Shown here one piece after another: positions 231 through 21,993 of a DNA stretch of 21,993 nucleotides. The number at the start of each line of letters is the position of its first letter. The first letter of the stretch is position 1. The stretch is taken from NCBI RefSeq assembly GCF_006345805.1, contig NW_021823580.1, forward strand, positions 1-21,993. Direction: 5' to 3'. The position numbers were made by a program, and so were the translations under genes. The notes under the pieces are model-generated. The model was not told the DNA's origin. It searched no databases and saw only the letters and a list, made by a program, of their open reading frames with translations. The DNA comes from Octopus sinensis. Lineage: Eukaryota.

Positions 231-256
231 GAGAGAGAGAGAGAGAGAGAGAGAGA
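231..256. repeat. (GA)13 microsatellite
   Basis: Perfect GA dinucleotide run read directly from the sequence. Confidence 0.98.
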
Positions 257-303
257 ATCGAAGCAACTAGTTTGAATACTATATTTGAGGGGGAAAAATA
301 ATT

Positions 304-3300
304 AATTAGTAACTTATATTTAGCTAAGAGATCACTAAATTTTTTGTTGTTTTTCAAGTACACATATGCAATATTTTGACATTTTATAACCTGAAAACTT
401 TTGCGAATTTAGTGATTTCTTTGATAAATATAAGCTTTTTATCAATCAGTTAACTTATTTAGCTAAGAGATCACTAAATTTTTTGTTGTTTTTCAAGTAC
501 ACATATGCAAAATTTTGACATTTTATAACCTGAAAACTTTTGCGAATTTAGTGATTTCTTTGATAAATATAAGCTTTTTATCAATCAATTAGCTAAGAGA
601 TCACTAAATTTTTTGTTGTTTTTCAAGTACACATATGCAATATTTTGACATTTTATAACCTGAAAACTTTTGCGAATTTAGTGATTTCTTTGATAAATAT
701 AAGCTTTTTATCAATCAGTTAACTTATATTTAGCTAAGAGATCACTAAATTTTTTGTGTTTTTCAAGTACACATATGCAAAATTTTGACATTTTATAACC
801 TGAAAACTTTTGCGAATTTAGTGATTTCTTTGATAAATATAAGCTTTTTATCAATCAGTTAACTTATATTTAGCTAAGAGATCACTAAATTTTTTGTTGT
901 TTTTCAAGTACACATATGCAAAATTTTGACATTTTATAACCTGAAAACTTTTGCGAATTTAGTGATTTCTTTGATAAATATAAGCTTTTTATCAATCAGT
1001 TAACTTATATTTAGCTAAGAGATCACTAAATTTTTTGTTGTTTTTCAAGTACACATATGCAAAATTTTGACATTTTATAACCTAAAAACTTTTGCGAATT
1101 TAGTGATTTCTTTGATAAATATAAGCTTTTTATCAATCAGTTAACTTATATTTAGCTAAGAGATCACTAAATTTTTTGTTGTTTTTCAAGTACACATATG
1201 CAAAATTTTGACATTTTATAACCTGAAAAGTTTTGCGAATTTAGCGATTTCTTTGATAAATATAAGCTTTTTATCAATCAGTTAACTTATATTTAGCTAA
1301 GAGATCACTAAATTTTTTGTTGTTTTTCAAGTACACATATGCAAAATTTTGACATTTTATAACCTGAAAACTTTTGCGAATTTAGTGATTTCTTTGATAA
1401 ATATAAGCTTTTTATCAATCAGTTAACTTATACTTAGCTAAGAGATCACTAAATATTTTGTTGTTTTTCAAGTACACATGCAAAATTTTGACATTTTATA
1501 ACCTGAAAACTTTTACGAATTTAGTGATTTCTTTGATAAATATAAGCTTTTTATCAATCAGTTAACTTATATTTAGCTAAGAGATCACTAAATTTTTTGT
1601 TGTTTTTCAAGTACACATATGCAAAATTTTGAAATTTTATAACCTGAAAACTTTTGCGAATTTAGTGAATTCTTTGATAAATATAAGCTTTTTATCAATC
1701 AGTTAACATATTAGCTAAGAGATCACTAATTTTTTGTTGTTTTTCAAGTACACATGCAAAATTTTGACATTTTATAACTTGAAAACTTTTGCGAATTTAG
1801 TGATTTCTTTGATAAATATAAGCTTTTTATCAATCAGTTAACTTATATTTAGCTAAGAGATCACTAAATTTTTTGTTGTTTTTCAAGTACACATATGCAA
1901 TATTTTGACATTTTATAACCTGAAAACTTTTGCGAATTTAGTGATTTCTTTGATAAATATAAGCTTTTTATCAATCAGTTAACTTATATTTAGCTAAGAG
2001 ATCACTAAATTTTTTGTTGTTTTTCAAGTACACATATGCAATATTTTGACATTTTATAACCTGAAAACTTTTGCGAATTTAGTGATTTCTTTGATAAATA
2101 TAAGCTTTTTATCAATCAGTTAACTTATATTTAGCTAAGAGATCACTAAATTTTTTGTTGTTTTTCAAGTACACATATGCAATATTTTGACATTTTATAA
2201 CCTGAAAACTTTTGCGAATTTAGTGATTTCTTTGATAAATATAAGCTTTTTATCAATTAGTTAACTTATATTTAGCTAAGAGATCACTAAATTTTTTGTT
2301 GTTTTTCAAGTACACATATGCAATATTTTGACATTTTATAACCTGAAAACTTTTGCGAATTTAGTGATTTCTTTGATAAATATAAGCTTTTTATCAATCA
2401 GTTAACTTATATTTAGCTAAGAGATCACTAAAGTTATTGTTGTTTTCCAAGTACACATATGCAAAATTTTGACATTTTATAACCTGAAAACTTTTGCGAA
2501 TTTAGTGATTTCTTTGATAAATATAAGCTTTTTATCAATCAGTTAACTTATATTTAGCTAAGAGATCACTAAATTTTTTGTTGTTTTTCAAGTACACATA
2601 TGCAATATTTTGACATTTTATAACCTGAAAACTTTTGCGATTTTAGTGATCTCTTGGATAAATATAAGCTTTTTATCAATCAGTTAACTTATATTTAGCT
2701 AAGAGATCACTAAATTTTTTGTTGTTTTTCAAGTACACATATGCAATATTTTGACATTTTATAACCTGAAAACTTTTGCGAATTTAGTGATTTCTTTGAT
2801 AAATATAAGCTTTTTATCAATCAGTTAACTTATATTTAGCTAAGAGATCACTAAATTTTTTGTTGTTTTTCAAGTACACATATGCAAAATTTTGACATTT
2901 TATAACCTGAAAACTTTTGCGAATTTAGTGATTTCTTTGATAAATATAAGCTTTTTATCAATCAGTTAACTTATATTTAGCTAAGAGATCACTAAATTTT
3001 TTGTTGTTTTTCAAGTACACATGCAAAATTTTGACATTTTATAACCTGAAAACTTTTGCGAATTTAGTGATTTCTTTGATAAATATAAGCTTTTTATCAA
3101 TCAGTTAACTTATATTTAGCTAAGAGATCACTAAATTTTTTGTTGTTTTTCAAGTACACATATGCAATATTTTGACATTTTATAACCTGAAAACTTTTGC
3201 GAATTTAGTGATTTCTTTGATAAGAATATGAATTTTATCAATCAGTTAACTTATATTTAGCTAAGAGTTCACTAAATTTTTTGTTGTTTTTCAAGAACAC

Positions 3301-6300
3301 ATATGCAATATTTTGACATTTTCTAACCTGAAAACTTTTGCGAATTTAGTGATTTCTTTGATAAATATAAGCTTTTTATCAATCAGTTAACTTATATTTA
3401 GCTAAGAGTTCACTAAATTTTTTGTTGTTTTTCAAGTACACATATGCAAAATTTTGACATTTTACAACCTGAAAACTTTTGCGAATTTAGTGATTTCTTT
3501 GATAAATATAAGCTTTTTATCAATCAGTTAACTTATTTAGCTAAGAGATCACTAAAGTTTTTGTTTTTTCAAGTACACATATGCAATATTTTGACATTTT
3601 ATAACCTGAAAACTTTTGCGAATTTAGTGATTCTTTGATAAATTAAGCTTTTATCAATCAGTTAACTTATATTTAGCTAAGATCACTAAATTTTTTTGTT
3701 TTTCAAGTACACATATGCAATATTTTGACATTTTCTAACCTGAAAACTTTTGCGAATTTAGTGATCTCTTGGATAAATAAAAGCTTTTTATCAATCATTT
3801 AACTTATATTTAGCTAAGAGATCACTAAATTTTTTGTTGTTTTTCAAGTACACATATGCAATATTTTGACATTTTCTAACCTGAAAACTTTTGCGATTTT
3901 AGTGATCTCTTGGATAGATATAAGCTTTTTATCAATCAGTTAACTTATATTTAGCTAAGAGATCACTAAATTTTTTGTTGTTTTTCAAGTACACATATGC
4001 AATATTTTGACATTTTATAACCTGAAAACTTTTGCGAATTTAGTGATTTCTTTGATAAATATAAGCTTTTTATCAATCATTTAACTTATATTTAGCTAAG
4101 AGATCACTAAATTTTTTGTTGTTTTTCAAGTACACATATGCAATATTTTGACATTTTTATAACTGAAAACTTTTGCGAATTTAGTGATTTCTTTGATAAA
4201 TATAAGCTTTTTATCAATCAGTTAACTTATATTTAGCTAAGAGATCACTAAAGTTTTTGTTGTTTTTCAAGTACACATGCAAAATTTTGACATTTTATAA
4301 CCTGAAAACTTTTGCGAATTTAGTGATTTCTTTGATAAATATAAGCTTTTTATCAATCATTTAACTTATATTTAGCTAAAAGAACACTAAATTTTTTGTT
4401 GTTTTTCAAGTACACATATGCAATATTTTGACATTTTATAACCTGAAAACTTTTGCGAATTTAGTGATTTCTTTGATAAATATAAGCTTTTTATCAATCA
4501 GTTAACTTATATTTAGCTAAGAGATCACTAAATTTTTTGTTGTTTTTCATGTACACATATGCAATATTTTGACATTTTATAACCTGAAAACTTTTGCGAA
4601 TTTAGTGATTTCTTTGATAAATATAAGCTTTTTATCAATCAGTTAACTTATATTTAACTAAGAGATCACTAATTTTTTGTTGTTTTTCAAGTACACATAT
4701 GCAATATTTTGACATTTTATAACCTGAAAACTTTTGCGAATTTAGTGATTTCTTTGATAAATAAGCTTTTTATCAATCAGTTACTTATATTTAGCTAAGA
4801 GATCACTAAATTTTTTGTTGTTTTTCAAGTACACATATGCAATATTTTGACATTTTATAACCTGAAAACTTTTGCGAATTTAGTGATTTCTTTGATAAAT
4901 ATAAGCTTTTTATCAATCAGTTAACTTATATTTAACTAAGAGATCACTAAATTTTTTGTTGTTTTTCAAGTACACATATGCAATATTTTGACATTTTATA
5001 ACCTGAAAACTTTTGCGAATTTAGTGATTTCTTTGATAAATATAAGCTTTTTATCAATCAGTTAACTTATATTTAGCTAAGAGATCACTAAATTTTTTGT
5101 TGTTTTTCAAGTACACATATGCAATATTTTGACATTTTATAACCTGAAAACTTTTGCGAATTTAGTGATTTCTTTGATAAATATAAGCTTTTTATCAATC
5201 AGTTAACTTATATTTAACTAAGAGATCACTAAATTTTTTGTTGTTTTTCAAGTACACATATGCAATATTTTGACATTTTATAACCTGAAAACTTTTGCGA
5301 ATTTAGTGATTTCTTTGATAAATATAAGCTTTTTATCAATCAGTTAACTTATATTTAGCTAAGAGATCACTAAATTTTTTGTTGTTTTTCAAGTACACAT
5401 ATGCAATATTTTGACATTTAATAACCTGAAAACTTTTGCGAATTTAGTGATTTCTTTGAAATATATAAGCTTTTTATCAATCAGTTAACTTATATTTAGC
5501 TAAGAGATCACTAAATTTTTTGTTGATTTTCAAGTACACCTATGCAATATTTTGACATTTTATAACCTGAAAACTTTTGCGAATTTAGTGATTTCTTTGA
5601 TAAATATAAGCTTTTTATCAATCAGTTAACTTATATTAAGCTAAGAGATCACTAAATTTTTTGTTGTTTTTCAAGTACACATATGCAATATTTTGATATC
5701 TTCTAACCTGAAAACTTTTGCGATTTTAGTGATCCCTTGTATAAATATAAGCTTTTTATCAATCAGTTAACTTATATTTAACTAAGAGATCACTAAATTT
5801 TTTGTTGTTTTTCAAGTACACATATGCAATATTTTGACATTTTATAACCTGAAAACTTTTGCGAATTTAGTGATTTCTTTGATAAATATAAGCTTTTTAT
5901 CAATCAGTTAACTTATATTTAGCTAAGAGATCACTAAATTTTTTGTTGTTTTTCAAGTACACATAGGCAATATTTTGACATTTTATAACCTGAAAACTTT
6001 TGCGATTTTACTGATCTCTTGGATAATATACGCTTTTTTGTACAAGTTACTTATATTTAGCTAAGAGATCACTAATTTTTTTTGTTGTTTTTCCAGTACA
6101 CATATGCAATATTTTGACATTTTATAACCTGAAAACTTTTGCGAATTTAGTGATTTCTTTGATAAATATAAGCTTTTTATCAATCAGTTAACTTATATTT
6201 AGCTAAGAGATCACTAAATTTTCTGTTGTTTTTCAAGTACACATATGCCAAATTTTGACATTTTATAACCTGAAAACTTTTGCGAATTTAGTGATTTCTT

Positions 6301-9300
6301 TGATAAATATAAGCTTTTTATCAATCAGTTAACTTATATTTAGCTAAGAGATCACTAAATTTTTTGTTGTTTTTCAAGTACACATATGCAAAATTTTGAC
6401 ATTTTATAACCTGAAAACTTATGCGATTTTAGTGATTTCTTTGATAAATATAAGCTATTTATCAATCAGTTAACTTATATTTAGCTAAGAGATCACTAAA
6501 TTTTTTGTTGTTTTTCAAGTACACATATGCAAAATTTTGACATTTTATAATCTGAAAACTTTTGCGAATTTAGTGATTTCTTTGATAAATATAAGCTTTT
6601 TATCAATCAGTTAACTTATATTTAGCTAAGAGATCACTAAATTTTTTGTTGTTTTTCAAGTACACATATGCAAAATTTTGACATTTCATAACCTGAAAAC
6701 TTCTGCGAATTTAGTGATTTCTTTGATAAATATAAGCTTTTTATCAATCAGTTAACTTATATTTAGCTAAGAGATCACTAAATTTTTTGTTGTTTTTCAA
6801 GTACACATATGCAAAATTTTGACATTTTATAACCTGAAAACTTATGCGATTTTAGTGATTTCTTTGATAAATATAAGCTTTTTATCAATCAGTTAACTTA
6901 TATTTAGCTAAGAGATCACTAAATTTTTTGTTGTTTTTCAAGTACACATATGCAAAGTTTGGACATTTTATAACCTAAAAACTTTTGCGAATTTAGTGAT
7001 TTCTTTGATAAATATAAGCTTTTTATCAATCAGTTAACTTATATTTAGCTAAGAGATCACTAAATTTTTTGTTGTTTTTCAAGTACACATATGCAATATT
7101 TTGACATTTTATAACCTGAAAACTTTTGCGAATTTAGTGATTTCTTTGATAAATATAAGCTTTTTATCAATCAGTTAACTTATATTTAGCTAAGAGATCA
7201 CTAAATTTTTTGTTGTTTTTCAAGTACACATATGCAAAATTTTGACATTTTATAACCTGAAAACTTTTGCGAATTTAGTGATTTCTTTGATAAATATAAG
7301 CTTTTTATCAATCAGTTAACTTATATTTAGCTAAGAGATCACTAAATTTTTTGTTGTTTTTCAAGTACACATATGCAAAATTTTGACATTTTATAACCTG
7401 AAAACTTATGCGATTTTAGTGATTTCTTTCATAAATATAAGCTTTTTATCAATCAGTTAACTTATATTTAGCTAAGAGATCACTAAATTTTTTGTTGTTT
7501 TTCAAGTACACATATGCCAATTTTTGATATATTATAACCTGAAAACTTTTGCGAATTTAGTGATTCTTTGATAAATATAAGCTTTTTATCAATCCTTAAC
7601 TTATATTTAGCTAAGAGATCACTAAATTTTTTGTTGTTTTTCAAGTACACATATGCAAAATTTTGACATTTTATAACCTGAAAAGTTTTGCGAATTTAGC
7701 GATTTCTTTGATAAATATAAGCTTTTTATCAATCAGTTACCTTATATTTAGCTAAGAGATCACTAATTTTTTGTTGTTTTTCAAGTACACATATGCAAAA
7801 TTTTTACATTTTATAACCTGAAAACTTTTGCGAATTTAGTGATTTCTTTGATAAATATAAGCTTTTTATCAATCAGTTAACTTATATTTAGCTAAGAGAT
7901 CACTAAATTTTTTGTTGTTTTTCAAGTACACATATGCAACATTTTGACATTTTATAACCTGAAAACTTTTGCGAATTTAGTGATTTCTTTGATAAATATA
8001 AGCTTTTTATCAATCAGTTAACTTATATTTAGCTAAGATATCACTAAATTTTTTGTTGATTTTCAAGTACACATATGCAAAATTTTGACATTTTATAACC
8101 TGAAAACTTTTGCGAATTTAGTGATTTCTTTCATAAATATAGCTTTTTATCAATCAGTTAACTTATATTAGCTAAGAGATAACTAAATTTTTTGTTGTTT
8201 TTCAAGTACACATATGCAAAATTTTGACATTTTATAACCTAAAAACTTTTGCGAATTTAGTGATTTCTTTGATAAATATAAGCTTTTTATCAATCAGTTA
8301 ACTTATATTTAGCTAAGAGATCACTAAATTTTTTGTTGTTTTTCAAGTACACATGCAAAATTTTGACATTTTATAACCTGAAAACTTTTGCGAATTTAGT
8401 GATTTCTTTGATAAATATAAGCTTTTTATCAATCAGTTAACTTATATTTAGCTAAGAGATCACTAAATTTTTTGTTGTTTTTCAAGTACACATATGCAAA
8501 ATTTTGACATTTTATAACCTGAAAACTTTTGCGAATTTAGTGATTTCTTTGATAAATATAAGCTTTTTATCAATCAGTTAACTTATATTTAGCTAAGAGA
8601 TCACTAAATTTTTTGTTGTTTTTCAAGTACACATGCAAAATTTTGACATTTTATAACCTGAAAACTTTTGCGAATTTAGTGATTTCTTTGATAAATATAA
8701 GCTTTTTATCAATCAGTTAACTTATATTTAGCTAAGAGATCAATAAATTTTTTGTTGTTTTTGAAGTACACATATGCAATATTTTGACATTTTATTACCT
8801 GAAAACTTTTGCGAATTTAGTGATTTCTTTGATATAATAAGCTTTTTATCAATCAGTTGACTTATATTTAGCTAAGAGATCACTAAATTTTTTGTTGTTT
8901 TTCAAGTACACATATGCAATATTTTGACATTTTAACCTGAAAACTTTTGCGAATTTAGTGATTTCTTTGATAAATTAAGCTTTTTATCACATCAGTTAAC
9001 TTATATTTAGCTAAGATAACACTAAATGTTTTGTGTTTTTTCAAGTACACATATGCAATATTTTGACATTTTATAACCTGAAAACTTTTGCGAATTAGTG
9101 ATTTCTTTGATAAATATAAGCTTTTTATCAATTAGTTAACTTATTTAGCTAAGAGATCACTAAATTTTTTGTTGTTTTTCAAGTACACATATGCAATATT
9201 TTGACAATTTTAACCTGAAAACTTTTGCGAATTTAGTGATTTCTTTGATAAATATAAGCTTTTTATCAATCAGTTAACTAAGAGATCACTAAATTTTTTG

Positions 9301-12300
9301 TTGTTTTTCAAGTACACATATGCAAAATTTTGACATTTTATAACCTGAAAACTTTTGCGAATTTAGTGATTTCTTTGATAAATATAAGCTTTTTATCAAT
9401 CAGTTAACTTATATTTAGCTAAGAGATCACTAAATTTTTTGTTGTTTTTCAAGTACACATGAAAAATTTTGACATTTTATAACCTGAAAACTTTTGCGAA
9501 TTTAGTGATTTCTTTGATAAATATAAGCTTTTTATCAATCAGTTAACTTATATTTAGCTAAGAGATCACTAAAGTTTTTGTTGTTTTTCAAGTACACATA
9601 TGCAATATTTTGACATTTTATAACCTGAAAACTTTTGCGAATTTAGTGATTTCTTTGATAAATATAAGCTTTTTATCAATCAGTTCACTTATATTTAGCT
9701 AAGAGATCACTAAATTTTTTGTTGTTTTTCAAGTACACATATGCAATATTTTGACATTTTCTAACCTAAAAACCTTTGCGATTTTAGTGATCTCTTGGAT
9801 AAATATAAGCTTTTTATCAATCAGTTAACTTATATTTGGCTAAGAGATCACTAAATTTTTTGTTGTTTTTCAAGTACACATATGCAATATTTTGACATTT
9901 TATAACCTGAAAACTTTTGCGATTTTAGTGATCTCTTGGATAAATATAAGCTTTTTATCAATCAGTTAACTTATATTTAGCTAAGAGATCACTAAATTTT
10001 TTGTTGTTTTTCAAGTACACATATGCAATATTTTGACATTTTAACTAACCTAAAAACCTTTGCGATTTTAGTGATCTCTTGTAAATATAAGCTTTTTATC
10101 AATCAGTTAAGTTATATTTGGCTAAGAGATCACTAAATTTTTTGTTGTTTTTCAAGTACACATATGCAATATTTTGACATTTTATAACCTGAAAACTTTT
10201 GCGAATTTAGTGATTCTTTGATAAATATACTTTTTATCATTCAGTAACTTATATTTAGCTAAGAGAACACTAAATTTTTTGTTGTTTTTCAAGTACACAT
10301 GCAATATTTTGACATTTTATAACCTGAAAACTTTTGCGAATTTAGTGATTTCTTTGATAAATATAAGCTTTTATCAATTAGTTAACTTATATTTAGCTAA
10401 GAGATCACTAAATTTTTTTTGTTTTTCAGTACACATATGCATATTTTGACAATTTATAACCTGAAAACTTTTGCGAATTTAGTGATTTCTTTGATAAATA
10501 TAAGCTTTTTATCAATCAGTTAACTTATATTTAGCTAAGAGATCACTAAAGTTTTTGTTGTTTTCCAAGTACACATATGCAAAATTTTGACATTTTATAA
10601 CCTGAAAACTTTTGCGAATTTAGTGATTTCTTTGATAAATATAAGCTTTTTATCAATCAGTTAACTTATATTTAGCTAAGAGATCACTAAATTTTTTGTT
10701 GTTTTTCAAGTACACATGAATTTTGACATTTTATAACCTGAAAACTTTTGAGAATTTAGTGATTTCTTTGATAAATATAAGCTTTTTATCATCAGTTAAC
10801 TATATTTAGCTAAGAGATCACTAAATTTTTTGTTGTTTTTCAAGTACACATATGCAATATTTTGACATTTTATAACCTGAAAACTTTTGCGAATTAGTGA
10901 TTTCTTTGATAAATATAGCTTTTATCAATCAGTTAACTTATATTTAGCTAAGAGATCACTAAATTTTTTGTTGTTTTTCAAGTACACATATGCAATTTTG
11001 ACATTTTATAACCTGAAAACTTTTGCGATTTTAGTGATTTCTTTGATAATATAAGCTTTTTATCAATCAGTTACTTATATTTAGCTAAGAATCACTAAAT
11101 TTTTTGTTGTTTTTCAAGTACACATATGCAATATTTTGACATTTTATAACCTGAAAACTTTTGCGAATTTAGTGATTTCTTTGATAAATATAAGCTTTTT
11201 ATCAATCAGTTACTTATATTAGCTAAGAGATCACTAATTTTTTGTTGTTTTTCAAGTACACATATGCAAAATTTTGACATTTTATAACCTGAAAACTTTT
11301 GCGAATTTAGTGATTTCTTTGATAAATATAAGCTTTTATCAATCAGTTAACTTATATAGCTAAGAGATCACTAAATTTTTGTTGTTTTTCAAGTACACAT
11401 GAAAAATTTTGACATTTATAACCTGAAAACTTTTGCGAATTTAGTGATTCTTTGATAAATATAAGCTTTTATCAATCAGTTAACTTATATTTAGCTAAGA
11501 GATCACTAAAGTTTTGTTTTTTTCAAGTACACATATGCAATATTTTGACATTTTTAACCTGAAAACTTTTGCGAATTAGTGATTTCTTTGATAAATATAA
11601 GCTTTTTATCAATCAGTTAACTTATATTTAGCTAAGAGATCACTAAATTTTTTGTTGTTTTTCAAGTACAACATATGCAATATTTTGACATTTTCTAACC
11701 TAAAAACCTTTGGATTTTAGTGATCTCTGGATAATATAAGCTTTTTATCAATCAGTTAACTATATTTGGCTAAGAGATCACTAAATTTTTTGTGTTTTTC
11801 AAGTACACATATGCAATATTTTGACATTTTATAACCTGAAAACTTTTGCGATTTTAGTGATCTCTTGATAAATATAAGCTTTTTATCAATCAGTTAACTA
11901 TATTTAGCTAAGAGATCACTAAATTTTTTGTTGTTTTTCAAGTACACATATGCAATTTTGACATTTTATAACCTGAAAACTTTTGCGAATTTAGTGATTC
12001 TTTGATAAATATAAGTTTTTATCAATCAGTTAACTTATATTTAGCTAAGAGATCACTAAATTTTTGTTGTTTTTCAAGTACACATATGCAAAATTTGACA
12101 TTTTATAACCTGAAAACTTTTGCGAATTTAGTGATTTCTTTGATAAATATAAGCTTTTTATCAATCAGTTAACTTATATTTAGCTAAGAGATCACTAAAT
12201 TTTGTTTGTTTTTTCAAGTACACATGCAAAATTTTGACATTTTATAACCTGAAAACTTTTGCGAATTTAGTGATTTCTTTGATAAATAAAGCTTTATCAA

Positions 12301-15300
12301 TCATTTAACTTATATTAGCTAAAAGAAACACTAAATTTTTTGTTGTTTTTCAAGTACACATATGCAATATTTTGACATTTTATAACCTGAAAACTTTGCG
12401 AATTTAGTGATTTCTTTGATAATATAAGCTTTTATCAATCAGTTAACTTATATTTAGCTAAGAGATCACTAAATTTTTGTTGTTTTCATGTACACATATG
12501 CAATATTTTGACATTTTTAACCTGAAAACTTTTGCGAATTTAGTGATCTTTGATAAATATAAGCTTTTTATCAATCAGTTAACTTATATTTAACTAAGAG
12601 ATCACTAAATTTTTTGTGTTTTTCAAGTACACATATGCAATATTTTGACATTTTATAACCTGAAAACTTTTGCGAATTTAGTGATTTCTTTGATACAATA
12701 AGCTTTTTATCAATCAGTTAACTTATATTTAGCTAAGAGATCACTAAATTTTTTGTGTTTTTCAAGTACACATATGCAATTTTGAATGACATTTTATAAC
12801 CTGAAAACTTTTGCGAATTTAGTGATTTCTTTGATTAAATATAAGCTTTTTATCAATCAGTTAACTTATATTTAGCTAAGAGATCACTAAATTTTTGGTG
12901 TTTTTCAAGTCCACATATGCAATATTTTGACATAATAAACCGAAAAACTTTGCGAATTTAGTGATTTCTTTGATATATAAGCTTTTTCAATCAGTTAACT
13001 TATATTTAGCTAAGAGATCACTAATTTTTTGTTGATTTTCAAGTACACCTATGCAATATTTTGACATTTTCTAACCTGAAAACTTTTGCGAATTAGTGAT
13101 TTCTTTGATAAATATAAGCTTTTTATCTATCAGTTCCCTATATTTAGCTAAGAGATCACTAAATTTTTTCTTGTTTTCAAGTACACATATGCAATATTTT
13201 GACATTTTATAACCTGAAAACTTTTGCGAATTTAGTGATTTCTTTGATAAATATAAGCTTTTATCAATCAGTTAACTTATATTAAGCTAAGAGATCACTA
13301 AATTTTTTGTTGTTTTTCAAGTACACATATGCAATATTTTGATATTTTCTAACCTGAAAACTTTGCGATTTAGTGATCCCTTGTATAAATATAAGCTTTT
13401 TATCAATCGTTAACTTATATTTAACTAAGAGATCACTAAATTTTTGTTGTTTTTCAAGTACACATATGCCATATTTTGACATTTTATAACCTGAAAACTT
13501 TCCGAATTTTGATTTCTTTGATAAATATAAGCTTTTTATCAATCAGTTAACTTATATTAGCTAAGAGATCACTAAATTTTTTGTGTTTTTTCAAGTAACC
13601 ATATGCAAAATTTTGACATTTTATAACCTGAAAACTTTTGCGAATTTAGTGATTTCTTTGATAAATATAAGCTTTTTATCAATCATTTACTTATATTTAG
13701 CTAAGAGATCACTAAATTTTTTGTTGTTTTTCAAGTACACATATGCAATATTTTGACATTTTATAACCTGAAAACTTTTGCGAATTTAGTGATTTCTTTG
13801 ATAAATATAAGCTTTTCATCAATCAGTTAACTTATATTTAACTAAGAGATCACTAAATTTTTGTTGTTTTTCAAGTACACATATGCAATATTTTGACATT
13901 TTATAACCTGAAAACTTTTGCGAATTTAGTGATTTCTTTGATAAATATAAGCTTTTTATCAATCATTAACTTATATTTAGCTAAGAGATCACTAATTTTG
14001 TGTTTTTTCAGTACACATATGCAATTTTTGACATTTAATAACCTGAAAACTTTTGCGAATTTAGTGATTTCTTTGATAAATATAAGCTTTTTATCAATCA
14101 GTTAACTTATATTAAGCTAAGAGATCACTAAATTTTTTGTTGTTTTTCAAGTACACATATGCATATTTTGATATCTTCTAACCTGAAAACTTTTGCGATT
14201 TTAGTGATCCCTTGTATATATAAGCTTTTTATCAATCAGTTAACTTATATTTAAGAGATCACTAATTTTTTGTTGTTTTCAAGTACACATATGCAATATT
14301 TTGACATTTTATAACCTGAAAACTTTCCGAATTTAGTGATTTCTTTGATAAATAGAAGCTTTTATCAATCAGTTAACTATATTTAGCTAAGAGATCACTA
14401 AATTTTTTGTGTTTTTCAAGTACACATAGGCAATATTTTGACATTTTATAACCTGAAAACTTTTGCGATTTTACTGATCTCTTGGATAAATATACGCTTT
14501 TTATGTACCAGTTAACTTATATTTAGCTAAGGGATCACTAAATATTTTGTTGATTTTCAAGTACACATATGCAATATTTTGACATTTTACAACCTGAAAA
14601 CTTTTGCGAATTTAGTGATTTCTTTGATAAATATAAGCTTTTTATCAATCAGTTAACTAATATTTAGCTAAGAGATCACTAAATTTTTTGTTGATTTTCA
14701 AGTACACCTATGCATATTTTGACATTTTCTACCTGAAAACTTTTGCGAATTTGCGTTTCTTTGATAAATATAAGCTTTTTATCAATCAGTTCTTATATTT
14801 AGCTAAGAAATCGTAAATTTTTTGCTGTTTTTCAAGTACACATATGCAATATTTTGACATTTTAATACCTGAAAACTTTTGCGAATTTAGTGATCTCTTT
14901 GATAAACATAAGCTTTTTATCAATCAGTTAACTTCTATTTAGCTAAGAGATCACTAAATTTTTGTTGTTTTTTCAAGTACACATATGCAAAATTTTGACA
15001 TTTTATAACCTGAAAACTTTTGCGAATTTAGTGATTTCTTTGATAAATATAAGCTTTTTATCAATCAGTTAACTTATATTTAGCTAAGAGATCACTAAAT
15101 TTTTTGTTGTTTTTCAAGTACACATATGCAATATTTTGACATTTTATAACCTGAAAACTTTTGCGAATTTAGTGATTTCTTTGATAAATATAAGCTTTTT
15201 ATCAATCAGTTAACTTATATTTAGCTAAGAGATCACTAAATTTTCTGTTGTTTTTCAAGTACACATATGCCAAATTTTGACATTTTATAACCTGAAAACT

Positions 15301-18300
15301 TTTGCGAATTTAGTGATTTCTTTGATAAATATAAGCTTTTTATCAATCAGTTAACTTATATTTAGCTAAGAGATCACTAAATTTTTTGTTGTTTTTCAAG
15401 TACATATGCAAAATTTTGACATTTTATAACCTGAAAACTTATTCGATTTTAGTGATTTCTTTGATAAATATAAGCTATTATCAATCATTAACTTATATTT
15501 AGCTAAGAGATCACTAAATTTTTTGTTGTTTTTCAAGTACACATAGCAAAATTTTGACATTTTATAACTGAAACTTTTGCGAATTTAGTGATTTCTTTGA
15601 TAAATATAAGCTTTTTATCAATCAGTTAACTTATTTTAGCTAAGAGATCACTAAATTTTTTGTTGTTTTTCAAGTACACATATGCAAAATTTTGACATTT
15701 TATAACCTGAAAACTTCTGCGAATTTAGTCATTTCTTTGATAAATATAAGCTTTTATCAATCAGTTAACTTATATTTAGCTAAGAGATCACTAAATTTTT
15801 TGTTGTTTTTCAAGTACACATATGCAAAATTTTGACATTTTATAACCTGAAAACTTATGCGATTTTAGTGATTTCTTTCATAAATATAAGCTTTTTATCA
15901 ATCAGTTAACTTATATTTAGCTAAGAGATCACTAAATTTTCTGTTGTTTTTCAAGTACACATATGCAAAATTTTGACATTTTATAACCTGAAAACTTTTG
16001 CGAATTTAGTGATTTCTTTGATAAATATAAGCTTTTTATCAATCAGTTAACTTATATTTAGCTAAGAGATCACTAAATTTTTTGTTGTTTTTCAAGTACA
16101 CATATGCAATATTTTGACATTTTAAACCTGAAAACTTTTGCGAATTTAGTGATTTCTTGATAATATAAGCTTTTTATCAATCAGTTAACTTATATTTAGC
16201 TAAGAGATCACTAAATTTTTTGTTGTTTTTTCAGTACACATATGCAAAATTTCACATTTTATAACCTGAAAACTTTTGCGAATTTAGTGATTTCTTTGAT
16301 AAATATAAGACTTTTTATCAATCAGTTAACTTATATTTAGCTAAGAGATCACTAAATTTTTTGTTGTTTTTCAAGTACACATATGCATATTTTGACATTT
16401 TATAACCTGAAAACTTTGCGATTTTAGTGATCTCTTGTATAAATATAAGCTTTTTATCAATCAGTTAACTTTATTTAGCTAAGATCACTATTTTTTGTTG
16501 TTTTTCATGTACACTATGCAATATTTTGACATTTTATAACCTGAAAACTTTTGCGAATTTAGCGATTTCTTTGATAAATATAAGCTTTTATCAATCAGTT
16601 AACTTATATTAGCTAAGAGATCACTAGATATTTTGTTGTTTTTCAAGTACACATGCAATATTTTGACATTTTATAACCTGAAAACTTTTGCAAATTTAGT
16701 GATTTCTTTGATAAATATAAGCTTTTTATCAATCAGTTAACTTATATTTGAGCTAGAGATCACTAAATTTTTTGTTGTGTTTCAGTACACATTGCAATAT
16801 TTTGACATTTTATAACCTGAAAACTTTTGCAATTTTAGTGATCTCTTGGATAATATAAGCTTTTATCAATCAGTTAACTTATATTTAGCTAAGAGATCAC
16901 AAAATTTTTTGTTGTTTTTCAATACACATATGCAATATTTGACATTTTCTAAACTGAAAACGTGCGATTTTGTGATCTCTTGATAAATATAAGCTTTTAT
17001 CAATCAGTTAACTTATATTTAGCTAAGCTCATCACTAAACTTTTGTTTTTTTTCAAGTACACATATGCAATATTTTTACATTTTCTAACCTGAAAACTTT
17101 TGCGATTGTAGTGATCTCTTGGATAAATATAGCTTTTTATCAATCAGTTAACTTATATTTAGCTAAGAGATCACTAAATTTTTTGTTGTTTTTCAAGTAC
17201 ACATATGCAATTTTGAACATTTTATAACCTGAAAACTTCTGCGAATTTAGTGATTTCTTTGATAAATATAAGCTTTTATCAATCAGTTAACTTATATTTA
17301 GCTAAGAGATCACTAAATTTTTTGTTGTTTTTCAAGTACACATATGCAAATTTTGACATTTTAACCTGAAAACTTATGCGATTTTAGTGATTTCTTTGAT
17401 AATATAAGCTTTTTATCAATCAGTTAACTTATATTTAGCTAAGAGATCACTAAATTTTTTGTTGTTTTTCAAGTACACATATGCAAAGTTTGGACATTTT
17501 TATAACCTAAAAACTTTTGCGAATTTAGTGATTTCTTTGAGAAATATAAGCTTTTTATCAATCAGTTAACTTATATTTAGCTAAGAGATCACTAAATTTT
17601 TTGTTGTTTTTCAAGTACACTATGCAATATTTTGACATTTTATAACCTGAAAACTTTTGCGAATTTAGTGATTTCTTTGATAATATAGCTTTTTATCAAT
17701 CAGTTAACTTATATTTAGCTAAGAGATCACTAAATTTGTTGTTTTTCAAGTACACATATGCAAAATTTTCACATTTTATACCTGAAAACTTTTGCGAATT
17801 TAGTGATTTCTTTGATAAATATAAGCTTTTTATCAATCAGTTAACTTATATTTAGCTAAGAGATCACTAAATTTTTTGTTGTTTTTCAAGTACCATATGC
17901 AATATTTTGACATTTTATAACCTGAAAACTTTTGCGATTAGTGATCTCTTGTATAATATAAGCTTTTTATCAATCAGTTAACTTATATTTAGCTAAGAGA
18001 TCACTAATTTTTTGTTGTTTTTTCATGTACACATATGCAATATTTTGACATTTTATAACCTGAAAACTTTTGCGAATTTAGCGATTTCTTTGATAAATAT
18101 AAGCTTTTTATCAATCAGTTAACTTATATTTAGCTAAGAGATCACTAGATATTTTGTTGTTTTTCAAGTACACATGCAATATTTTGACATTTTATAACCT
18201 GAAAACTTTTGCAAATTTAGTGATTTCTTTGATAAATATAAGCTTTTTATCAATCAGTTAACTTATATTTAGCTAAGAGATCACTAAATTTTTTGTTGTG

Positions 18301-18693
18301 TTTCAAGTACACATATGCAATATTTTGACATTTTATAACCTGAAAACTTTTGCGATTTTAGTGATCTCTTGGATAAATATAAGCTTTTTATCAATCAGTT
18401 AACTTATATTTAGCTAAGAGATCACTAAAATTTTTGTTGTTTTTCAAGTACACATATGCAATATTTTGACATTTTCTAAACTGAAAACGTGCGATTTTTG
18501 TGATCTCTTGGATAAATATAAGCTTTTTATCAATCAGTTAACTTATATTTAGCTAAGAGATCACTAAACTTTTTGTTGTTTTTCAAGTACACATATGCAA
18601 TATTTTGACATTTTCTAACCTGAAAACTTTTGCGATTTTAGTGATCTCTTGGATAAATATAAGCTTTTTATCAATCAGTTAACTTATATTTAG
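304..18693. repeat. 141-bp AT-rich satellite DNA array, about 130 head-to-tail monomers
   Basis: Consensus AGTTAACTTATATTTAGCTAAGAGATCACTAAATTTTTTGTTGTTTTTCAAGTACACATATGCAA(A/T)ATTTTGACATTTTATAACCTGAAAACTTTTGCGAATTTAGTGATTTCTTTGATAAATATAAGCTTTTTATCAATC is 141 nt with 33 G+C (~23%). HindIII sites AAGCTT at 841 and 982 confirm the period. Copy number is estimated from length, not counted. Confidence 0.99.
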
Positions 18694-19328
18694 GGGCAGG
18701 CAATTTATTGGCATCTAATTCAGGGGCAGATAATCCAGGGGTAGGTAATTCAGGGGCAGGTAATCCAAGGGTAGGTAATTCAGTGGCATCTAATTCAGAG
18801 GCAGGTATTTCAGGGCATGTAATTCAGGGGCAGGCAATTCAGTGGCAGGTAATTCAGGGGCAGATAATCCAGGGGTAGGTAATTCAGGGTATTGATCTGC
18901 ATGCTATTCTTTTTGACCCACTTGTATGTATATATATGTAATTCAGGGGCAGGTAATTCAGAGGCAGGTAATTCAGGGCATGTAATTCAGGGGCAGATTA
19001 TCCAGGGGTAGGTAATTCAGGGGCAGGTAATTGAGGGCATGTAATTTAGGGGCAGGTAATTCAGTGGCATCTAATTCAGGGGCAGGTAATTCAGGGGCAG
19101 ATAACCCAGGGGTAGGTAATTCAGGGGCAGGTAATTCAGAGGCAGGTAATTCAGGGCATGTAATTTAGGGGCAGGTAATTCAGTGGCATCGAATTCAGGG
19201 GCAGGTAATTCAGGGGCAGTTAATCCAGGGGTAGGTAATTCAGGGGCAGGTAATTCAGAGGCAGGTAATTCAGGGCATCTAATTCAGGGGCAGGTAATTC
19301 AGTGGCATCTAATTCAGGGGCAGGTAAT
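18693..19328 (+). repeat. 15-bp G-rich minisatellite, block 1 (interrupted at 18891-18936)
   Basis: Tandem GGGGCAGGTAATTCA with recurrent variants GGGGCAGATAATCCA, GGGGTAGGTAATTCA, GAGGCAGGTAATTCA, GGGCATGTAATTCA (14 nt) and GTGGCATCTAATTCA. Confidence 0.97.
18891..18936 (-). repeat. 46-bp inverted copy of the (TA)n/LINE junction at 20467-20512
   Basis: Its reverse complement TATATATACATACAAGTGGGTCAAAAAGAATAGCATGCAGATCAAT matches 20467-20512 (…GGGTCGAAAAGAATAGCATGCAGTTCAAT) with 2 mismatches. Confidence 0.93.
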
Positions 19329-19433
19329 CGCCTCGCCTTTTTTGGCCGCTTCGATTTTGTTCCCTTCGGTTTGGACGTCTCCAGGGAAGAAATCAAGGGT
19401 GACTGTGTCAACAGGAGACCGTTTATAGTGGTC

Positions 19434-19465
19434 AGGGAAATTCAAATTTGAGGGAAATTCAAATT
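19434..19465. repeat. Short tandem duplication, AGGGAAATTCAAATT x2 (17-bp period)
   Basis: Identical 15-mers at 19434-19448 and 19451-19465. The junction forms the palindrome TCAAATTTGA (19442-19451). Confidence 0.9.
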
Positions 19466-19617
19466 ACTCACAGAAAGTAGTAGATCTTCCAGTAATTACA
19501 GTTGTTTATCAGTAATCCTGCTGGGTTGTATTTGTTATTCTGTGTCTTCTGTGTCTTTGGCCGCTGACAGGTCAGGAGCAGCGAAAACACGTCAGTCACT
19601 GTGGATTCCTTTACTAC

Positions 19618-19641
19618 TATATATATGTATATATATATATA

Positions 19642-19672
<31 letters not shown>

Positions 19673-19673
19673 T
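19618..19673. repeat. Imperfect (TA)n microsatellite
   Basis: TA run with two TG interruptions and one AA phase shift. Confidence 0.97.
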
Positions 19674-20062
19674 TTCAGGGGTAGGTAATTCAGGGGCAGA
19701 TAATCCAGGGGTAGGTAATTCAGGTGCAGGTAATCCAGAGGCAGGTAATTCAGGGCATGTAATTCAGAGGCAGGTAATTCAGGGGCAGGTAATTCAGTGG
19801 CATCCAATTCAGGGGCAGGTAAACAGGGGCAGATAATCCAGGGGTAGGTAATTCAGGGGAAGGTAATTCAGAGGGAGGTAATTCAGGGCATGTAATTCAG
19901 GGGCAGATAATCCAGGGGTAGGTAATTCAGGGGCAGGTAATTCAGAGGCAGGTAATTCACGGCATGTAATTCAGGGGCAGGTAATTCAGTGGCATATAAT
20001 TCAGGGGCAGATAATCCAGGGGTAGGTAATTCAGGGGCAGGTAATTCAGAGGCAGGTAATTC
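19674..20062 (+). repeat. 15-bp G-rich minisatellite, block 2
   Basis: Same unit, variants and orientation as block 1. Confidence 0.97.
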
Positions 20063-20167
20063 CATGGCCCATGGAGTTTGGCCATGGGCTCTTAGGAGCC
20101 TCGTTCGATTTGTTTTGCTCCGCCTCTGTTCTGTTTTTGTCTTTTCCAACGGATTTCCTATTTATTC
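20063..20167 (-). other. Possible truncated coding exon fragment of an unidentified gene
   Basis: Minus strand has a strong acceptor TGTGTCTTTCTCTTCAG|G (AG at 20169-20168). The following 105 nt are open in only one frame (INRKSVGKDKNRTEAEQNKSNEAPKSPWPNSMGH) before running into the minisatellite. I recognise no homology. Confidence 0.3.
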
Positions 20168-20331
20168 CTGAAGAGAAAGACACAATATGGTCTCATTATT
20201 CAATCGGAATTTGGTAAATTGTGCCTTTCGAAACACGTGTAGAATGCAATAAAACGATTTCTGTTCAATCTTCGTTTAACTCCATTTCTTCAATTCACTA
20301 ATAATATTAAAATTCAATTATCCGCACCAAT

Positions 20332-20371
20332 GCACGGTTGCAACACCATATGGTTGTACCTCCAACCGTGC
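20332..20371. repeat. 40-bp nested inverted repeat
   Basis: GCACGGTTG (20332-20340) pairs with CAACCGTGC (20363-20371). The span also contains palindromes GTTGCAAC (20337-20344) and ACCATATGGT (20345-20354). Confidence 0.85.
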
Positions 20372-20443
20372 TGTCTTCTGCTGTGATTTTTGCTACCAAG
20401 GTATCGGTTAAACTTTTGATTATTCATCTTTCTATTTCACAAA

Positions 20444-20474
20444 ATATATGTATATATATATATATATATATATA
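20444..20474. repeat. (TA)n microsatellite
   Basis: TA run with one TG interruption, merging into TACATAC at the LINE edge. Confidence 0.96.
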
Positions 20475-20476
20475 CA

Positions 20477-20900
20477 TACAAGTGGGTCGAAAAGAATAGC
20501 ATGCAGTTCAATGCTGAAAAGTTTCAAGCTTTATGCTATCAGCATGCAAAACTAAATGCAATACCCAATGAATACACTGGACCCGGAGGAATAGCAATCC
20601 CAGAGGCACAATCAGTGCGTGACCTAGGTATTTACATGAGTGATGACGCGACCTTTCGTGTACATGTTGCTAAATTGGCAATGAAATGTAGACGACTGGC
20701 CGGATGGATCCTCAGAACCTTTAGAACAAGAGAAGAAACCATGATGGTCCTATGGAGGACACTTGTCCTAAGCCACTTTGATTACTGCTCTCAGTTATAG
20801 TCACCATCCAGTGTCAAGTTGATCACAGAGCTCGAGGCGATCCAACGTAGCTACACGAAGAAGATTGTAAGCTACTGGGAAAGACTCAAGAGATTAAAAC
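20477..20900 (+). mobile_element. Decayed non-LTR retrotransposon (CR1/L2/Jockey-group LINE) ORF2 fragment, C-terminal RT region
   Basis: One frame gives YKWVEKNSMQFNAEKFQ…VRDLGIYMSDDATFRVHV…AGWILRTFRTR…LWRTLVLSHFDYCSQL*SPSSVKLITELEAIQRSYTKKIVSYWERLKRLK. The W..N.MQFN..K, DLG, YCSQLWSP, LE.IQR and Y.ERL..L motifs are typical of this LINE group. TAG at 20798-20800 sits where Trp is expected. There is an apparent short in-frame deletion between TKKI and SYWERL, and both ends are truncated. Confidence 0.9.
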
Positions 20901-21993
20901 AGGGGCAGGTAATTCAGTGGCAGATAATCCAGTGGCAGGTAATTCAGGGGCAGATAATCCAGGGGTAGGTAATTCAGGGGCAGATAATCCAGGGGTAGGA
21001 AATTCAGGGTCAGGTAATTCAGAGGCAGGTAATTCAGGGCATGTAATTCAGGGGCAGGTAATTCAGTGGCATCGAATTCAGGGGCAGATAATCCAGGGGT
21101 AGGTAATTCAGGGGCAGGTAATTCAGACGCCGGTAATTCAGGGTATGTAATTCAGGGGCAGGTAATTCAGTGGCATCTAATTCAGGGGCAGCTAATTCAA
21201 GGGCAGATAAACCAGGTGTAGGTAATTCAGGGGCAGGCAATTCAGGGGCAGGTAATTCAGGGGCAGATAATCCAGGGGTAGGTAATTCAGGGGCAGGTAA
21301 TTCAGAGGCAGGTAATTCAGGGCATGTAATTCAGAGGCAGATAATCCAGGGGTAGGTAATTCAGGGCATGTAATTCAGAGGCAGGTAATTCAGGGGTAGG
21401 TAAATCAGGAGCAGGTAACTAAGAGGCATGTAATTCAGGGCATGTAATTCAGGGGCAGGTAATTCAGTGGCATCTAATTAAGGGGCAGGTAATTCAGGGC
21501 ATGTAATTAAGGGGCAGGTAATTCAGTGGCATCCAATTCAGGGGCAGGTAATTCAGGGGCAGATAATCCAGGGTTAGGCAATTCAGAGGCAGGTAATTCA
21601 GAGGCAGGTATATCAGGGGCAGGTAATTCAGGGGCAGATAATCCAGGGGTAGGTAATTTAGGCGCAGGTAATTCAGAGGCAGGTAATTCAGGGCATGTAA
21701 TTGAGGGGCAGGTAATTCAGTGGCATCTAATTCAGGGGCAGGTAATTCAGAGGCGGTAATTCAGGGCATGTAATTCAGAGTTGGTAATTCAGGGGTAGGT
21801 AATTCAGGCGCAGGTAATTCAGAGGCAGGTAATTCAGGGCATGTAATTCAGGGGCAGGTAACTCAGTGGCATCTAATTCAGGGGCAGGTAATTCAGGGGC
21901 AGATAATCCAGGAGTAGGTAATTCAGGGGCAGGTAATTCAGAGGCCCGTAATTCAGGCAGATAATCCAGGGTAGGTAATTCAGGGGCAGGTAA
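20900..21993 (+). repeat. 15-bp G-rich minisatellite, block 3 (runs off the window)
   Basis: Same unit, variants and orientation as blocks 1 and 2. Confidence 0.97.

What the first reader, a model, noticed from the sequence alone, without database searches (positions are those of the whole stretch)
313..453. Satellite monomer is a hidden foldback: 29-bp inverted repeats make each copy look like a 122-bp MITE plus a 19-bp spacer
Seen: CTTATATTTAGCTAAGAGATCACTAAATT (313-341) is the reverse complement of AATTTAGTGATTTCTTTGATAAATATAAG (406-434) at 26 of 29 positions. One monomer is therefore TIR(29)-64 bp-TIR(29) followed by a 19-bp spacer. Equivalently, a 29-bp stem with a 19-nt loop can form at every monomer junction, about 130 times. 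Known: some satellites derive from tandemly amplified MITE/foldback elements, and dyad-rich satellites have been proposed to form cruciforms relevant to centromere identity. Inference: this is either a MITE-born satellite or a structure-retaining, possibly centromeric one.
Basis: partly seen in the sequence, partly recalled or inferred. Interest (0 to 1): 0.7.

Follow-up and report, generated by a model that had tools for sequence, protein, structure and literature searches.

The report
Satellite repeat with built-in inverted repeat
An 18-kb block of a 141-base AT-rich repeat really does carry a 29-base inverted repeat in every copy, but nothing here shows that it is kept by selection or came from a jumping gene, so it is an ordinary new member of a well-known kind of satellite DNA.

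Summary
Window 313-341 is the reverse complement of 406-434 at 26 of 29 positions. This lies inside a 141-bp, 76% A+T satellite array (301-18693; 132 full units). None of 6000 shuffled monomers reached the inverted-repeat score (20, against a shuffle mean of 7.6-7.8 and a maximum of 15). Single-strand folding gives z = -6 to -7.

"122-bp MITE + 19-bp spacer" and "77-bp hairpin + 64-bp spacer" are the same array read in two registers. Neither register has a target-site duplication. Neither array end falls on an arm terminus. No solitary copy is in the window flanks or in three public collections, though these hold little eukaryotic DNA and the host genome was not available.

Selection for structure has no support:
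- The arms vary as much as the rest of the monomer.
- Re-pairing arms at random gives the same complementarity.
- 127 junction hairpins show no covariation.
- A rough energy estimate makes duplex cruciforms marginal at best.

Most likely the repeat is a relic of how the founder unit arose, by inverted duplication, template switch or a transposon. It has since been copied passively. It could still form hairpins on single strands or in RNA. The organism was not identified.

The parts
301..18693 (+). Array of the 141-bp AT-rich satellite: 132 full units plus partial units at both ends, all in one orientation
   Evidence: TRF gives period 141, 132.1 copies and 93% matches. Mean pairwise identity is 93.9%, with no higher-order period. 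All six frames contain stop codons.
313..453 (+). The exemplar monomer of the finding, identical to the array consensus
   Evidence: 0 differences from the consensus.
313..341 (+). Arm 1 of the inverted repeat (CTTATATTTAGCTAAGAGATCACTAAATT)
   Evidence: 26/29 complementary to 406-434. It recurs in every unit.
342..405 (+). 64-bp interior between the arms, with no significant dyad symmetry of its own
   Evidence: Folding z = 0.11. 13-14 of 32 ungapped pairs, p = 0.05-0.10; gapped alignment p = 0.07-0.15. In 45 monomers the T60A variant makes CAAAATTTTG, a 10-bp palindrome exactly on the dyad axis.
406..434 (+). Arm 2 of the inverted repeat (AATTTAGTGATTTCTTTGATAAATATAAG)
   Evidence: A subfamily variant (T95, C105, G110) occurs in 16-24 units, including the last three.
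435..453 (+). 19-bp spacer (CTTTTTATCAATCAGTTAA), which is the loop of the junction hairpin
   Evidence: It has no matching first and last k-mers, so no target-site duplication.
406..480 (+). First junction hairpin: arm 2, spacer and arm 1 of the next unit (this next arm has a 2-nt deletion); the consensus form is 77 nt
   Evidence: DNA hairpin -16.6 kcal/mol, z = -7.0. As RNA, -24.8 (+ strand) and -23.2 (- strand) kcal/mol. 127 junctions aligned: 95.4% of cells paired in register, against 31-51% when slid.
301..312 (+). Left end of the array: a degenerate copy of the last 13 consensus positions of the spacer (ATTAATTAG-TAA), so the array starts inside the spacer
   Evidence: starts at consensus position 129.
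18683..18693 (+). Right end of the array: the first 11 nt of arm 1 (CTTATATTTAG), running straight into the 15-bp minisatellite through a shared ATTTAG
   Evidence: ends at consensus position 11.

Best explanation
This is a conventional AT-rich satellite DNA: a 141-bp unit repeated 132 times head to tail.

Shown:
- The founder unit already contained one imperfect 29-bp inverted duplication. Its three mismatches are fixed in the array consensus.
- The arms accumulate changes at the same rate as the rest of the unit, and nothing maintains their pairing.
- The strand-level fold is predicted to be stable. A 29-bp stem with a 19-nt loop can form at each junction on single-stranded DNA (about -17 kcal/mol) or in RNA if the array is transcribed (about -25 kcal/mol).
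- A cruciform in duplex DNA would need strong unconstrained negative supercoiling.

Inferred:
- The repeat has been copied passively with the unit by the usual array processes (unequal exchange, conversion, replication slippage).
- The inverted duplication arose in one event in the founder, either a short template switch or inverted duplication, or capture of a small TIR-bearing element. The present data cannot separate these.
- Any present-day effect would be to ease slippage, exchange or circle formation, and so array turnover.
For: - The inverted repeat is real and non-random, and it is present in every unit in one register.
- The mismatches at arm positions 11, 13 and 18 are shared by the consensus, and no monomer exceeds 26 within-unit pairs.
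- Non-consensus fractions are 0.031 (arm 1), 0.039 (arm 2), 0.032 (interior) and 0.029 (spacer).
- Distinct substitution types per position are 0.91 in the arms and 0.93 elsewhere. High-frequency variants occupy 8 of 58 arm positions and 9 of 83 other positions.
- Randomly re-pairing the arms gives the same mean complementarity: 24.58 observed against 24.58 +/- 0.02.
- On 127 junction hairpins the covariation score is 0.026, against 0.027 in shuffles (393 of 500 shuffles reach it), with a single double-sided change.
- The symmetry is confined to the 29-bp arms. The interior is not significantly palindromic, and the unit has no direct sub-repeats and no higher-order repeat.
- There is no TSD in either register, and the array ends are not at arm termini.
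- Rough cruciform cost is +51.5 kcal/mol for the 77-bp form and +98.7 for the 122-bp form. Supercoil release at sigma = -0.06 is at most about -55 and -85 kcal/mol.
Against: - Intra-array variation is a weak test of selection. The copies are only about 6% apart and evolve in concert, so a constraint acting on the family as a whole would not show.
- 58 of 141 bp in one inverted repeat is much longer than the <10-bp dyads usual in satellite monomers (PMC5889037, PMC12581902). That may itself call for an explanation.
- The subfamily changes cluster in arm 2 (3 of 4 diagnostic sites). One of them (T105C) turns the G.T into G-C while another (A95T) breaks a pair, so stem strength stays level. This could be read as weak compensation.
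- The origin (TE versus template switch) is not resolved at all.
Confidence: 0.5

Rival explanations
1. MITE-born satellite. A 122-bp non-autonomous DNA transposon with 29-bp terminal inverted repeats, together with 19 bp of flank, was duplicated in tandem and amplified into the array.
For: - The unit looks like a MITE: short, AT-rich, non-coding, with 29-bp arms at 26/29 whose complementarity stops sharply at both outer ends.
- TE-to-satellite transitions are well documented, including from MITEs and foldback elements (PMC12628747, PMC5932611, PMC12581902).
- The region is TE-rich: a non-LTR reverse-transcriptase fragment lies 2 kb from the array.
Against: - There is no target-site duplication around the 122-bp unit, or around the 77-bp alternative.
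- The array begins inside the spacer and ends inside arm 1.
- No solitary or diverged copy is in the window flanks. None is in the viral, GTDB or JGI metagenome contigs beyond four chance 23-26-nt matches lacking a second arm, and none is among called ORFs.
- In the documented MITE cases the satellite usually grows from repeats inside the element and ends up without the terminal inverted repeats (PMC12628747). Whole-element tandems from double insertion would leave only a TSD-sized gap, not 19 bp (PMC5932611).
- None of this is decisive, because the host genome could not be searched.
Confidence: 0.25
2. Structure-selected satellite. The dyad is kept because hairpins or cruciforms at each junction mark the chromatin, for example for loading of centromeric nucleosomes.
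For: - The dyad symmetry greatly exceeds composition-matched permutations.
- The 19-nt spacer lies just within the <20 spacer used to define centromeric dyads (PMC5889037).
- Arrays of 9-16 kb built around dyad symmetries make up Tribolium centromeric regions (PMC12581902).
Against: - The arms are not more conserved than the rest of the unit, and show no covariation.
- Pairing only decays from the consensus value.
- Duplex extrusion is marginal or unfavourable on a rough estimate.
- The array is a single 18.4-kb block bounded by a unique flank on one side and by a minisatellite and TE debris on the other.
- There is no inversion of orientation (macro-dyad) within the array.
Confidence: 0.12
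3. Hairpin-RNA source. If the array is transcribed, each junction would give a roughly 77-nt hairpin with a 27-29-bp stem, a Dicer-type substrate. The array would then act as a small-RNA or heterochromatin-silencing locus.
For: - The RNA hairpin is -24.8 kcal/mol (+ strand) and -23.2 kcal/mol (- strand), z = -6.8 and -5.9.
- Rfam's only matches are miRNA-precursor models placed on the junction hairpins.
Against: - Those matches score 21-28 bits against gathering scores of 70-99, so they reflect generic hairpin shape only.
- There is no covariation.
- No expression data are available.
Confidence: 0.08

Closest known systems
Satellite DNAs whose monomers contain inverted repeats or inversely oriented subunits (tenebrionid beetles: Tribolium brevicornis, T. 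madens MAD2, T. audax TAUD2; short dyads in T. castaneum and T. freemani major satellites; PMC12581902, PMC13081366)
   Same: A tandem, AT-rich, non-coding repeat with a dyad inside each unit that predicts hairpins. Array lengths of about 10-20 kb occur in those genomes too.
   Different: Those monomers either carry <10-bp dyads or are built almost wholly of two long (about 470-700 bp) inverted subunits. Here a single 29-bp pair occupies 41% of a 141-bp unit, and the rest is not symmetric. There are no orientation switches in the array. No sequence similarity was tested, because no library was at hand.
TE-derived satellites (Xstir and miDNA4 MITEs of Xenopus, Tetris and Rehavkus foldback elements, Helentron/pearl repeats of oysters, double-insertion tandems in Drosophila; PMC12628747, PMC5932611, PMC12581902, PMC11136912)
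   Same: A short AT-rich unit bounded by inverted repeats and amplified in tandem, lying next to TE debris.
   Different: In those cases a dispersed parent element is known, and the satellite usually derives from repeats inside the element or its long termini. Here no parent, no dispersed copy and no TSD was found, and the whole putative element plus 19 bp would be the repeating unit.
[quoted passage not shown]
   Same: Dyad symmetry above composition-matched permutations, with a spacer <20 nt.
   Different: Their signal is many short (<10 bp) dyads. This is one long stem with a large loop, extrusion from duplex DNA is marginal on my estimate, and there are no centromere data.

Membership tests
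Satellite DNA | Long head-to-tail array of a unit of about 100 bp or more, in one orientation | tested here: met
   132 full units of 141 bp over 301-18693, all on one strand.
Satellite DNA | High similarity among copies (concerted evolution) and no coding capacity | tested here: met
   93.9% mean pairwise identity. Stop codons in all six frames of the consensus.
MITE (miniature inverted-repeat transposable element) | Short non-coding unit ending in terminal inverted repeats | tested here: met
   122 bp with 29-bp arms at 26/29, and the complementarity ends sharply at both termini. The same arms equally bound a 77-bp unit.
MITE (miniature inverted-repeat transposable element) | Target-site duplication flanking the element | tested here: not met
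   The flanks inside the array are the two ends of the 19-bp spacer (CTTTT... and ...GTTAA), with no shared k-mer for any k. The 77-bp register (flanks ...TTTTGCG and TTTTGTTG...) has no abutting duplication either. This applies to the array only. Solitary copies, if any exist, could not be examined.
MITE (miniature inverted-repeat transposable element) | Many dispersed solitary copies at unrelated loci, with empty sites | not testable with these tools
   The host genome was not available. There are none in the window flanks, and none in viral, GTDB or JGI metagenome contigs beyond chance.
MITE (miniature inverted-repeat transposable element) | Autonomous partner with the same termini and a transposase | not testable with these tools
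   The same scans as above found none. No TE library (Repbase/Dfam) was on hand.
Dyad-rich centromeric satellite (non-B DNA model) | Dyad symmetry above composition-matched permutations, spacer <20 nt | tested here: met
   0 of 6000 shuffles reach the score. The junction loop is 19 nt.
Dyad-rich centromeric satellite (non-B DNA model) | Predicted favourable cruciform extrusion from duplex DNA | tested here: inconclusive
   Nearest-neighbour estimate: +51.5 kcal/mol, against at most about -55 kcal/mol released at sigma = -0.06 for the 77-bp form. The 122-bp form is clearly unfavourable. The estimate is rough, with no junction term and no SIST model.
Dyad-rich centromeric satellite (non-B DNA model) | Association with CENH3/CENP-A chromatin at the primary constriction | not testable with these tools
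   This needs ChIP/CUT&Tag and FISH in the unidentified host.
Satellites made of inversely oriented subunits | The monomer consists essentially of two inverted halves | tested here: not met
   Only the 29-bp arms are complementary. The 64-bp interior gives p = 0.05-0.15 and a folding z of 0.11.
miRNA precursor / structured RNA family (Rfam) | Match to a curated covariance model at its gathering score | tested here: not met
   Best 27.8 bits against a gathering score of 70.

The most novel reading that the evidence does not exclude
The arms are functional protein- or RNA-level sites rather than relics. One version: the array is a tandem battery of about 130 Dicer-substrate hairpins that nucleates its own silencing. 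The other: the paired arms are retained transposase-binding termini recognised by a transposase or a domesticated derivative (as the CENP-B box is by a pogo-derived protein), which nicks or bends each unit and drives array homogenisation or centromere function.
Probability: 0.08. Interest if true: 0.65.

Novelty: new member of a known kind. Interest (0 to 1): 0.27.

Why it matters
If the arms proved to be true transposon termini, this would be a clean case of a whole MITE, rather than its internal repeats, turned into a satellite. If pairing proved to be conserved across species, it would add a long-stem example to the debate on whether DNA structure rather than sequence specifies centromeres.

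As it stands, the value is mainly a caution. A highly significant inverted repeat in a satellite unit is not by itself evidence either for a transposon origin or for selection on structure. In a tandem array, the '122-bp element + 19-bp spacer' reading cannot be told apart from its 77-bp + 64-bp alternative.

Tried and rejected
1. Extension of the palindrome through the whole 122 bp. A gapped self-alignment looked suggestive, but the interior is not significant by pair count, gapped score or folding.

2. A direct repeat flanking the whole array (TATATTTGAGGGG at 280-292 against TATATTTAGGGG at 18685-18696). This gave p = 0.06 against shuffles and was dropped.

3. Similarity of the left flank to the 15-bp minisatellite: p = 0.17.

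4. Higher-order repeat or internal direct sub-repeats: none.

5. External relatives.
- The exact 20-mer of arm 1 is absent from viral, GTDB-genome and JGI metagenome contigs.
- A degenerate pattern matching both arms gave 0 genome hits and 4 metagenome hits. These match over 23-26 nt only, with no second arm and no other part of the monomer. My rough expectation for that pattern in about 10^12 bases is 1 to 25 chance hits.

6. Reaching eukaryotic assemblies through called ORFs.
- A six-frame concatenated translation of the monomer found nothing.
- Two window ORFs are not on record.

7. Organism identification.
- The reverse-transcriptase fragment has 11 unnamed relatives at 65% identity or less, in ENA and Logan contigs.
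- Pfam gave nothing for the fragment.
- Run accessions and sequence strings are not in the paper library.
- Searches for a '141 bp' satellite returned only irrelevant papers.

8. A ribozyme or other structured RNA in the monomer: there are only sub-threshold miRNA-precursor-like matches.
Full report
**What is in the window.** The window is eukaryote-like repetitive DNA.
- Bases 1-300 are unique sequence that includes a (GA)13 run.
- Bases 301-18693 are one uninterrupted array of a 141-bp satellite with 76% A+T.
- The rest (18688-21993) holds three blocks of a 15-bp minisatellite (TTCAGGGGCAGGTAA), (TA)n runs, short unique stretches and a fragment of a non-LTR reverse transcriptase.
- Tandem Repeats Finder reports period 141, 132.1 copies and 93% matches.
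- A wrap-around alignment to the consensus places 132 full units plus a 12-nt partial unit at the left and an 11-nt partial unit at the right.

**Checking the observation.**
- CTTATATTTAGCTAAGAGATCACTAAATT (313-341) is the reverse complement of 406-434 at 26 of 29 positions, and the match ends sharply at both ends. The unit is therefore 29 + 64 + 29 + 19 = 141 bp, as stated.
- Monomer 313-453 equals the array consensus.
- All matches to the arm (up to 3 mismatches, either strand) lie inside the array and alternate regularly.
- Within-unit complementarity averages 24.6/29 (range 20-26). Across-junction complementarity also averages 24.6, and 103 of 131 junctions have at least 24 pairs.

**Is it more than chance?** Yes.
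- On the circularised consensus, the best ungapped inverted repeat scores 20. The mean is 7.6-7.8 and the maximum 14-15 in 3000 mononucleotide and 3000 dinucleotide shuffles, with none of the 6000 reaching it.
- Single-stranded DNA folding gives -19.5 kcal/mol (z = -6.1) for the 122-nt unit and -16.6 kcal/mol (z = -7.0) for the 77-nt junction hairpin.
Such repeats exist in genomes but are uncommon.

**How far the symmetry goes.**
- It is confined to the arms. The 64-bp interior folds no better than shuffles (z = 0.11).
- The interior pairs at 13-14 of 32 positions (p = 0.05-0.10) and gives p = 0.07-0.15 in a gapped comparison of its two halves.
- In 45 units the T60A variant creates CAAAATTTTG, a perfect palindrome exactly on the dyad axis. 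This is a curiosity, not a significant result.
- The unit has no direct sub-repeats, and the array has no higher-order period.

**Two registers, one array.** Because the units are tandem, 'arm-64-arm plus a 19-bp spacer' and 'arm-19-arm plus a 64-bp spacer' describe the same DNA. Nothing in the array favours the 122-bp register that makes the unit look like a MITE.
- I looked for a target-site duplication in both registers. The spacer CTTTTTATCAATCAGTTAA has no shared first and last k-mer. The interior begins TTTTGTTG and ends CTTTTGCG, with no abutting duplication.
- The array starts at consensus position 129, inside the spacer. It ends at position 11, inside arm 1, where it merges with the minisatellite through a shared ATTTAG. 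So neither boundary sits at an arm terminus.

**Is the pairing maintained?** Four tests say no.
1. The fraction of non-consensus bases is 0.031 in arm 1, 0.039 in arm 2, 0.032 in the interior and 0.029 in the spacer.
2. Distinct substitution types per position are 0.91 in the arms and 0.93 elsewhere. Variants present in at least 4 units occupy 8 of 58 arm positions and 9 of 83 other positions.
3. Randomly re-pairing arm 1 and arm 2 among units gives the same mean complementarity (24.58 +/- 0.02) as the real pairing (24.58). No unit exceeds the consensus 26 pairs.
4. On an alignment of 127 junction hairpins, 95.4% of cells pair in register, against 31-51% when slid. The covariation score is 0.026 against 0.027 in shuffles (393 of 500 reach it), and there is one double-sided change in 2195 cells.

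The caveat is that the copies are only about 6% apart and evolve in concert, so this is a weak test. A subfamily of 16-24 units, including the last three, carries A95T, T105C and T110G in arm 2. T105C turns the G.T into G-C while A95T breaks a pair, so the total stays at 26.

**Can it form a cruciform?** With nearest-neighbour DNA parameters:
- Converting the 77-bp junction duplex into two hairpins costs about +51.5 kcal/mol before any junction penalty.
- The 122-bp form costs about +98.7 kcal/mol.
- Relaxing the corresponding turns at sigma = -0.06 releases at most about 55 and 85 kcal/mol respectively, and much less at -0.03.

This is a rough calculation of my own. It indicates that extrusion from duplex DNA is marginal for the 19-nt-loop form and unfavourable for the 64-nt-loop form. 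Hairpins on single strands (replication, repair) or in RNA (-24.8 and -23.2 kcal/mol) are plausible. Rfam gives only sub-threshold miRNA-precursor-like matches on the junction hairpins (21-28 bits against gathering scores of 70-99).

**Looking for dispersed copies and relatives.**
- No solitary or diverged copy lies in the window flanks.
- An exact 20-mer of arm 1 is absent from IMG/VR, from the GTDB species genomes and from JGI metagenome contigs.
- A degenerate pattern fitting both arms found nothing in the genomes and four metagenome contigs. Those four match over 23-26 nt only and lack a second arm or any other part of the unit, so they are chance matches.
- A six-frame translation of the unit found no called ORF in the 5.8-billion-protein collection.
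- These collections contain little eukaryotic DNA, so this does not refute a MITE origin.
- The host could not be identified. The reverse-transcriptase fragment has 11 unnamed relatives at 65% identity or less, and literature searches by sequence, accession or '141 bp' gave nothing relevant.

**Most likely explanation.** This is an ordinary satellite whose founder unit already contained an imperfect 29-bp inverted duplication. The duplication has been carried along passively by array amplification and homogenisation, and it decays at the same rate as the rest of the unit.
- How the duplication arose is open. A single short template-switch or inverted-duplication event, or capture of a small TIR-bearing element, would each give this anatomy.
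- I put the passive-relic reading at about 0.5. This includes a non-TE origin, and also a TE origin that no longer matters.
- A MITE origin specifically is at about 0.25, selection for structure or a centromere role at about 0.12, and a hairpin-RNA role at about 0.08.

**Comparison with what is known.**
- Inverted repeats and palindromes in satellite monomers are a long-known, frequent feature (PMC12628747).
- Tribolium satellites range from <10-bp dyads to monomers built of 470-700-bp inverted subunits, in arrays of about 9-16 kb (PMC12581902).
- Dyad enrichment at centromeres has been proposed as a specifying feature, defined with palindromes >4 bp and spacers <20 (PMC5889037).
- TE-to-satellite routes are documented for MITEs, foldback elements, Helentrons and double insertions (PMC12628747, PMC5932611).

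The present repeat fits this landscape as a new member. Its one unusual trait is the length of the stem relative to the unit, with 58 of 141 bp in one inverted repeat. It meets the definition of satellite DNA. It meets only the TIR criterion of a MITE and fails the TSD criterion in the array. It meets the dyad criterion of the centromere model but none of the functional ones, which could not be tested.

**Verdict.** The finding is a new member of a known kind, of modest interest.

Noticed in passing
window 18688-19328, 19674-20062, 20900-21993: Three blocks of a 15-bp minisatellite (TTCAGGGGCAGGTAA) with superimposed periods of about 74 and 119 bp. The satellite array abuts the first block directly, sharing ATTTAG at the junction.
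   Followed up: partly
window 20477-20900 (+): C-terminal fragment of a non-LTR retrotransposon reverse transcriptase (…LWRTLVLSHFDYCSQL*…) with an in-frame stop at 20798-20800. It is cut off by the minisatellite at about 20900. It has only 11 unnamed relatives (65% identity or less) in the protein collection and no Pfam hit for the fragment.
   Followed up: partly
window 18891-18940 and 20463-20512: A 50-nt inverted repeat (94% complementary). The 5' edge of the RT fragment plus its adjoining (TA)n recurs in reverse orientation inside the first minisatellite block, which suggests a second, inverted remnant of the same element or an inversion.
   Followed up: no
window 301-18693: There is a divergence gradient along the array. 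Units in the left third differ from the consensus by about 2-4 positions, including the very first full unit, which is identical to the consensus. Units in the right third differ by about 5-7. This is unlike the usual picture of both array edges being the most diverged.
   Followed up: partly
window 372 and the equivalent consensus position 60 in every unit: A T/A polymorphism (80 T, 45 A units, occurring in runs) lies exactly on the dyad axis. The A form makes the perfect 10-bp palindrome CAAAATTTTG.
   Followed up: partly
window 420-445 and the equivalent in each unit: The start of the spacer (CTTTTTATCAA) is complementary to the end of arm 2 (TTGATAAA..AAG) around the HindIII site AAGCTT, as if it were a truncated third arm copy. 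As a perfect 8-bp stem it is no better than the best chance repeat in shuffles, and the gapped extension was not tested. HpaI (GTTAAC) straddles the spacer/arm 1 boundary.
   Followed up: partly
window 231-256, 19618-19673, 20444-20478: Simple repeats (GA)13 and (TA)n flank the unique stretches.
   Followed up: no
window 280-292 and 18685-18696: TATATTTGAGGGG to the left of the array resembles TATATTTAGGGG at its right end. This is not significant (p = 0.06).
   Followed up: yes
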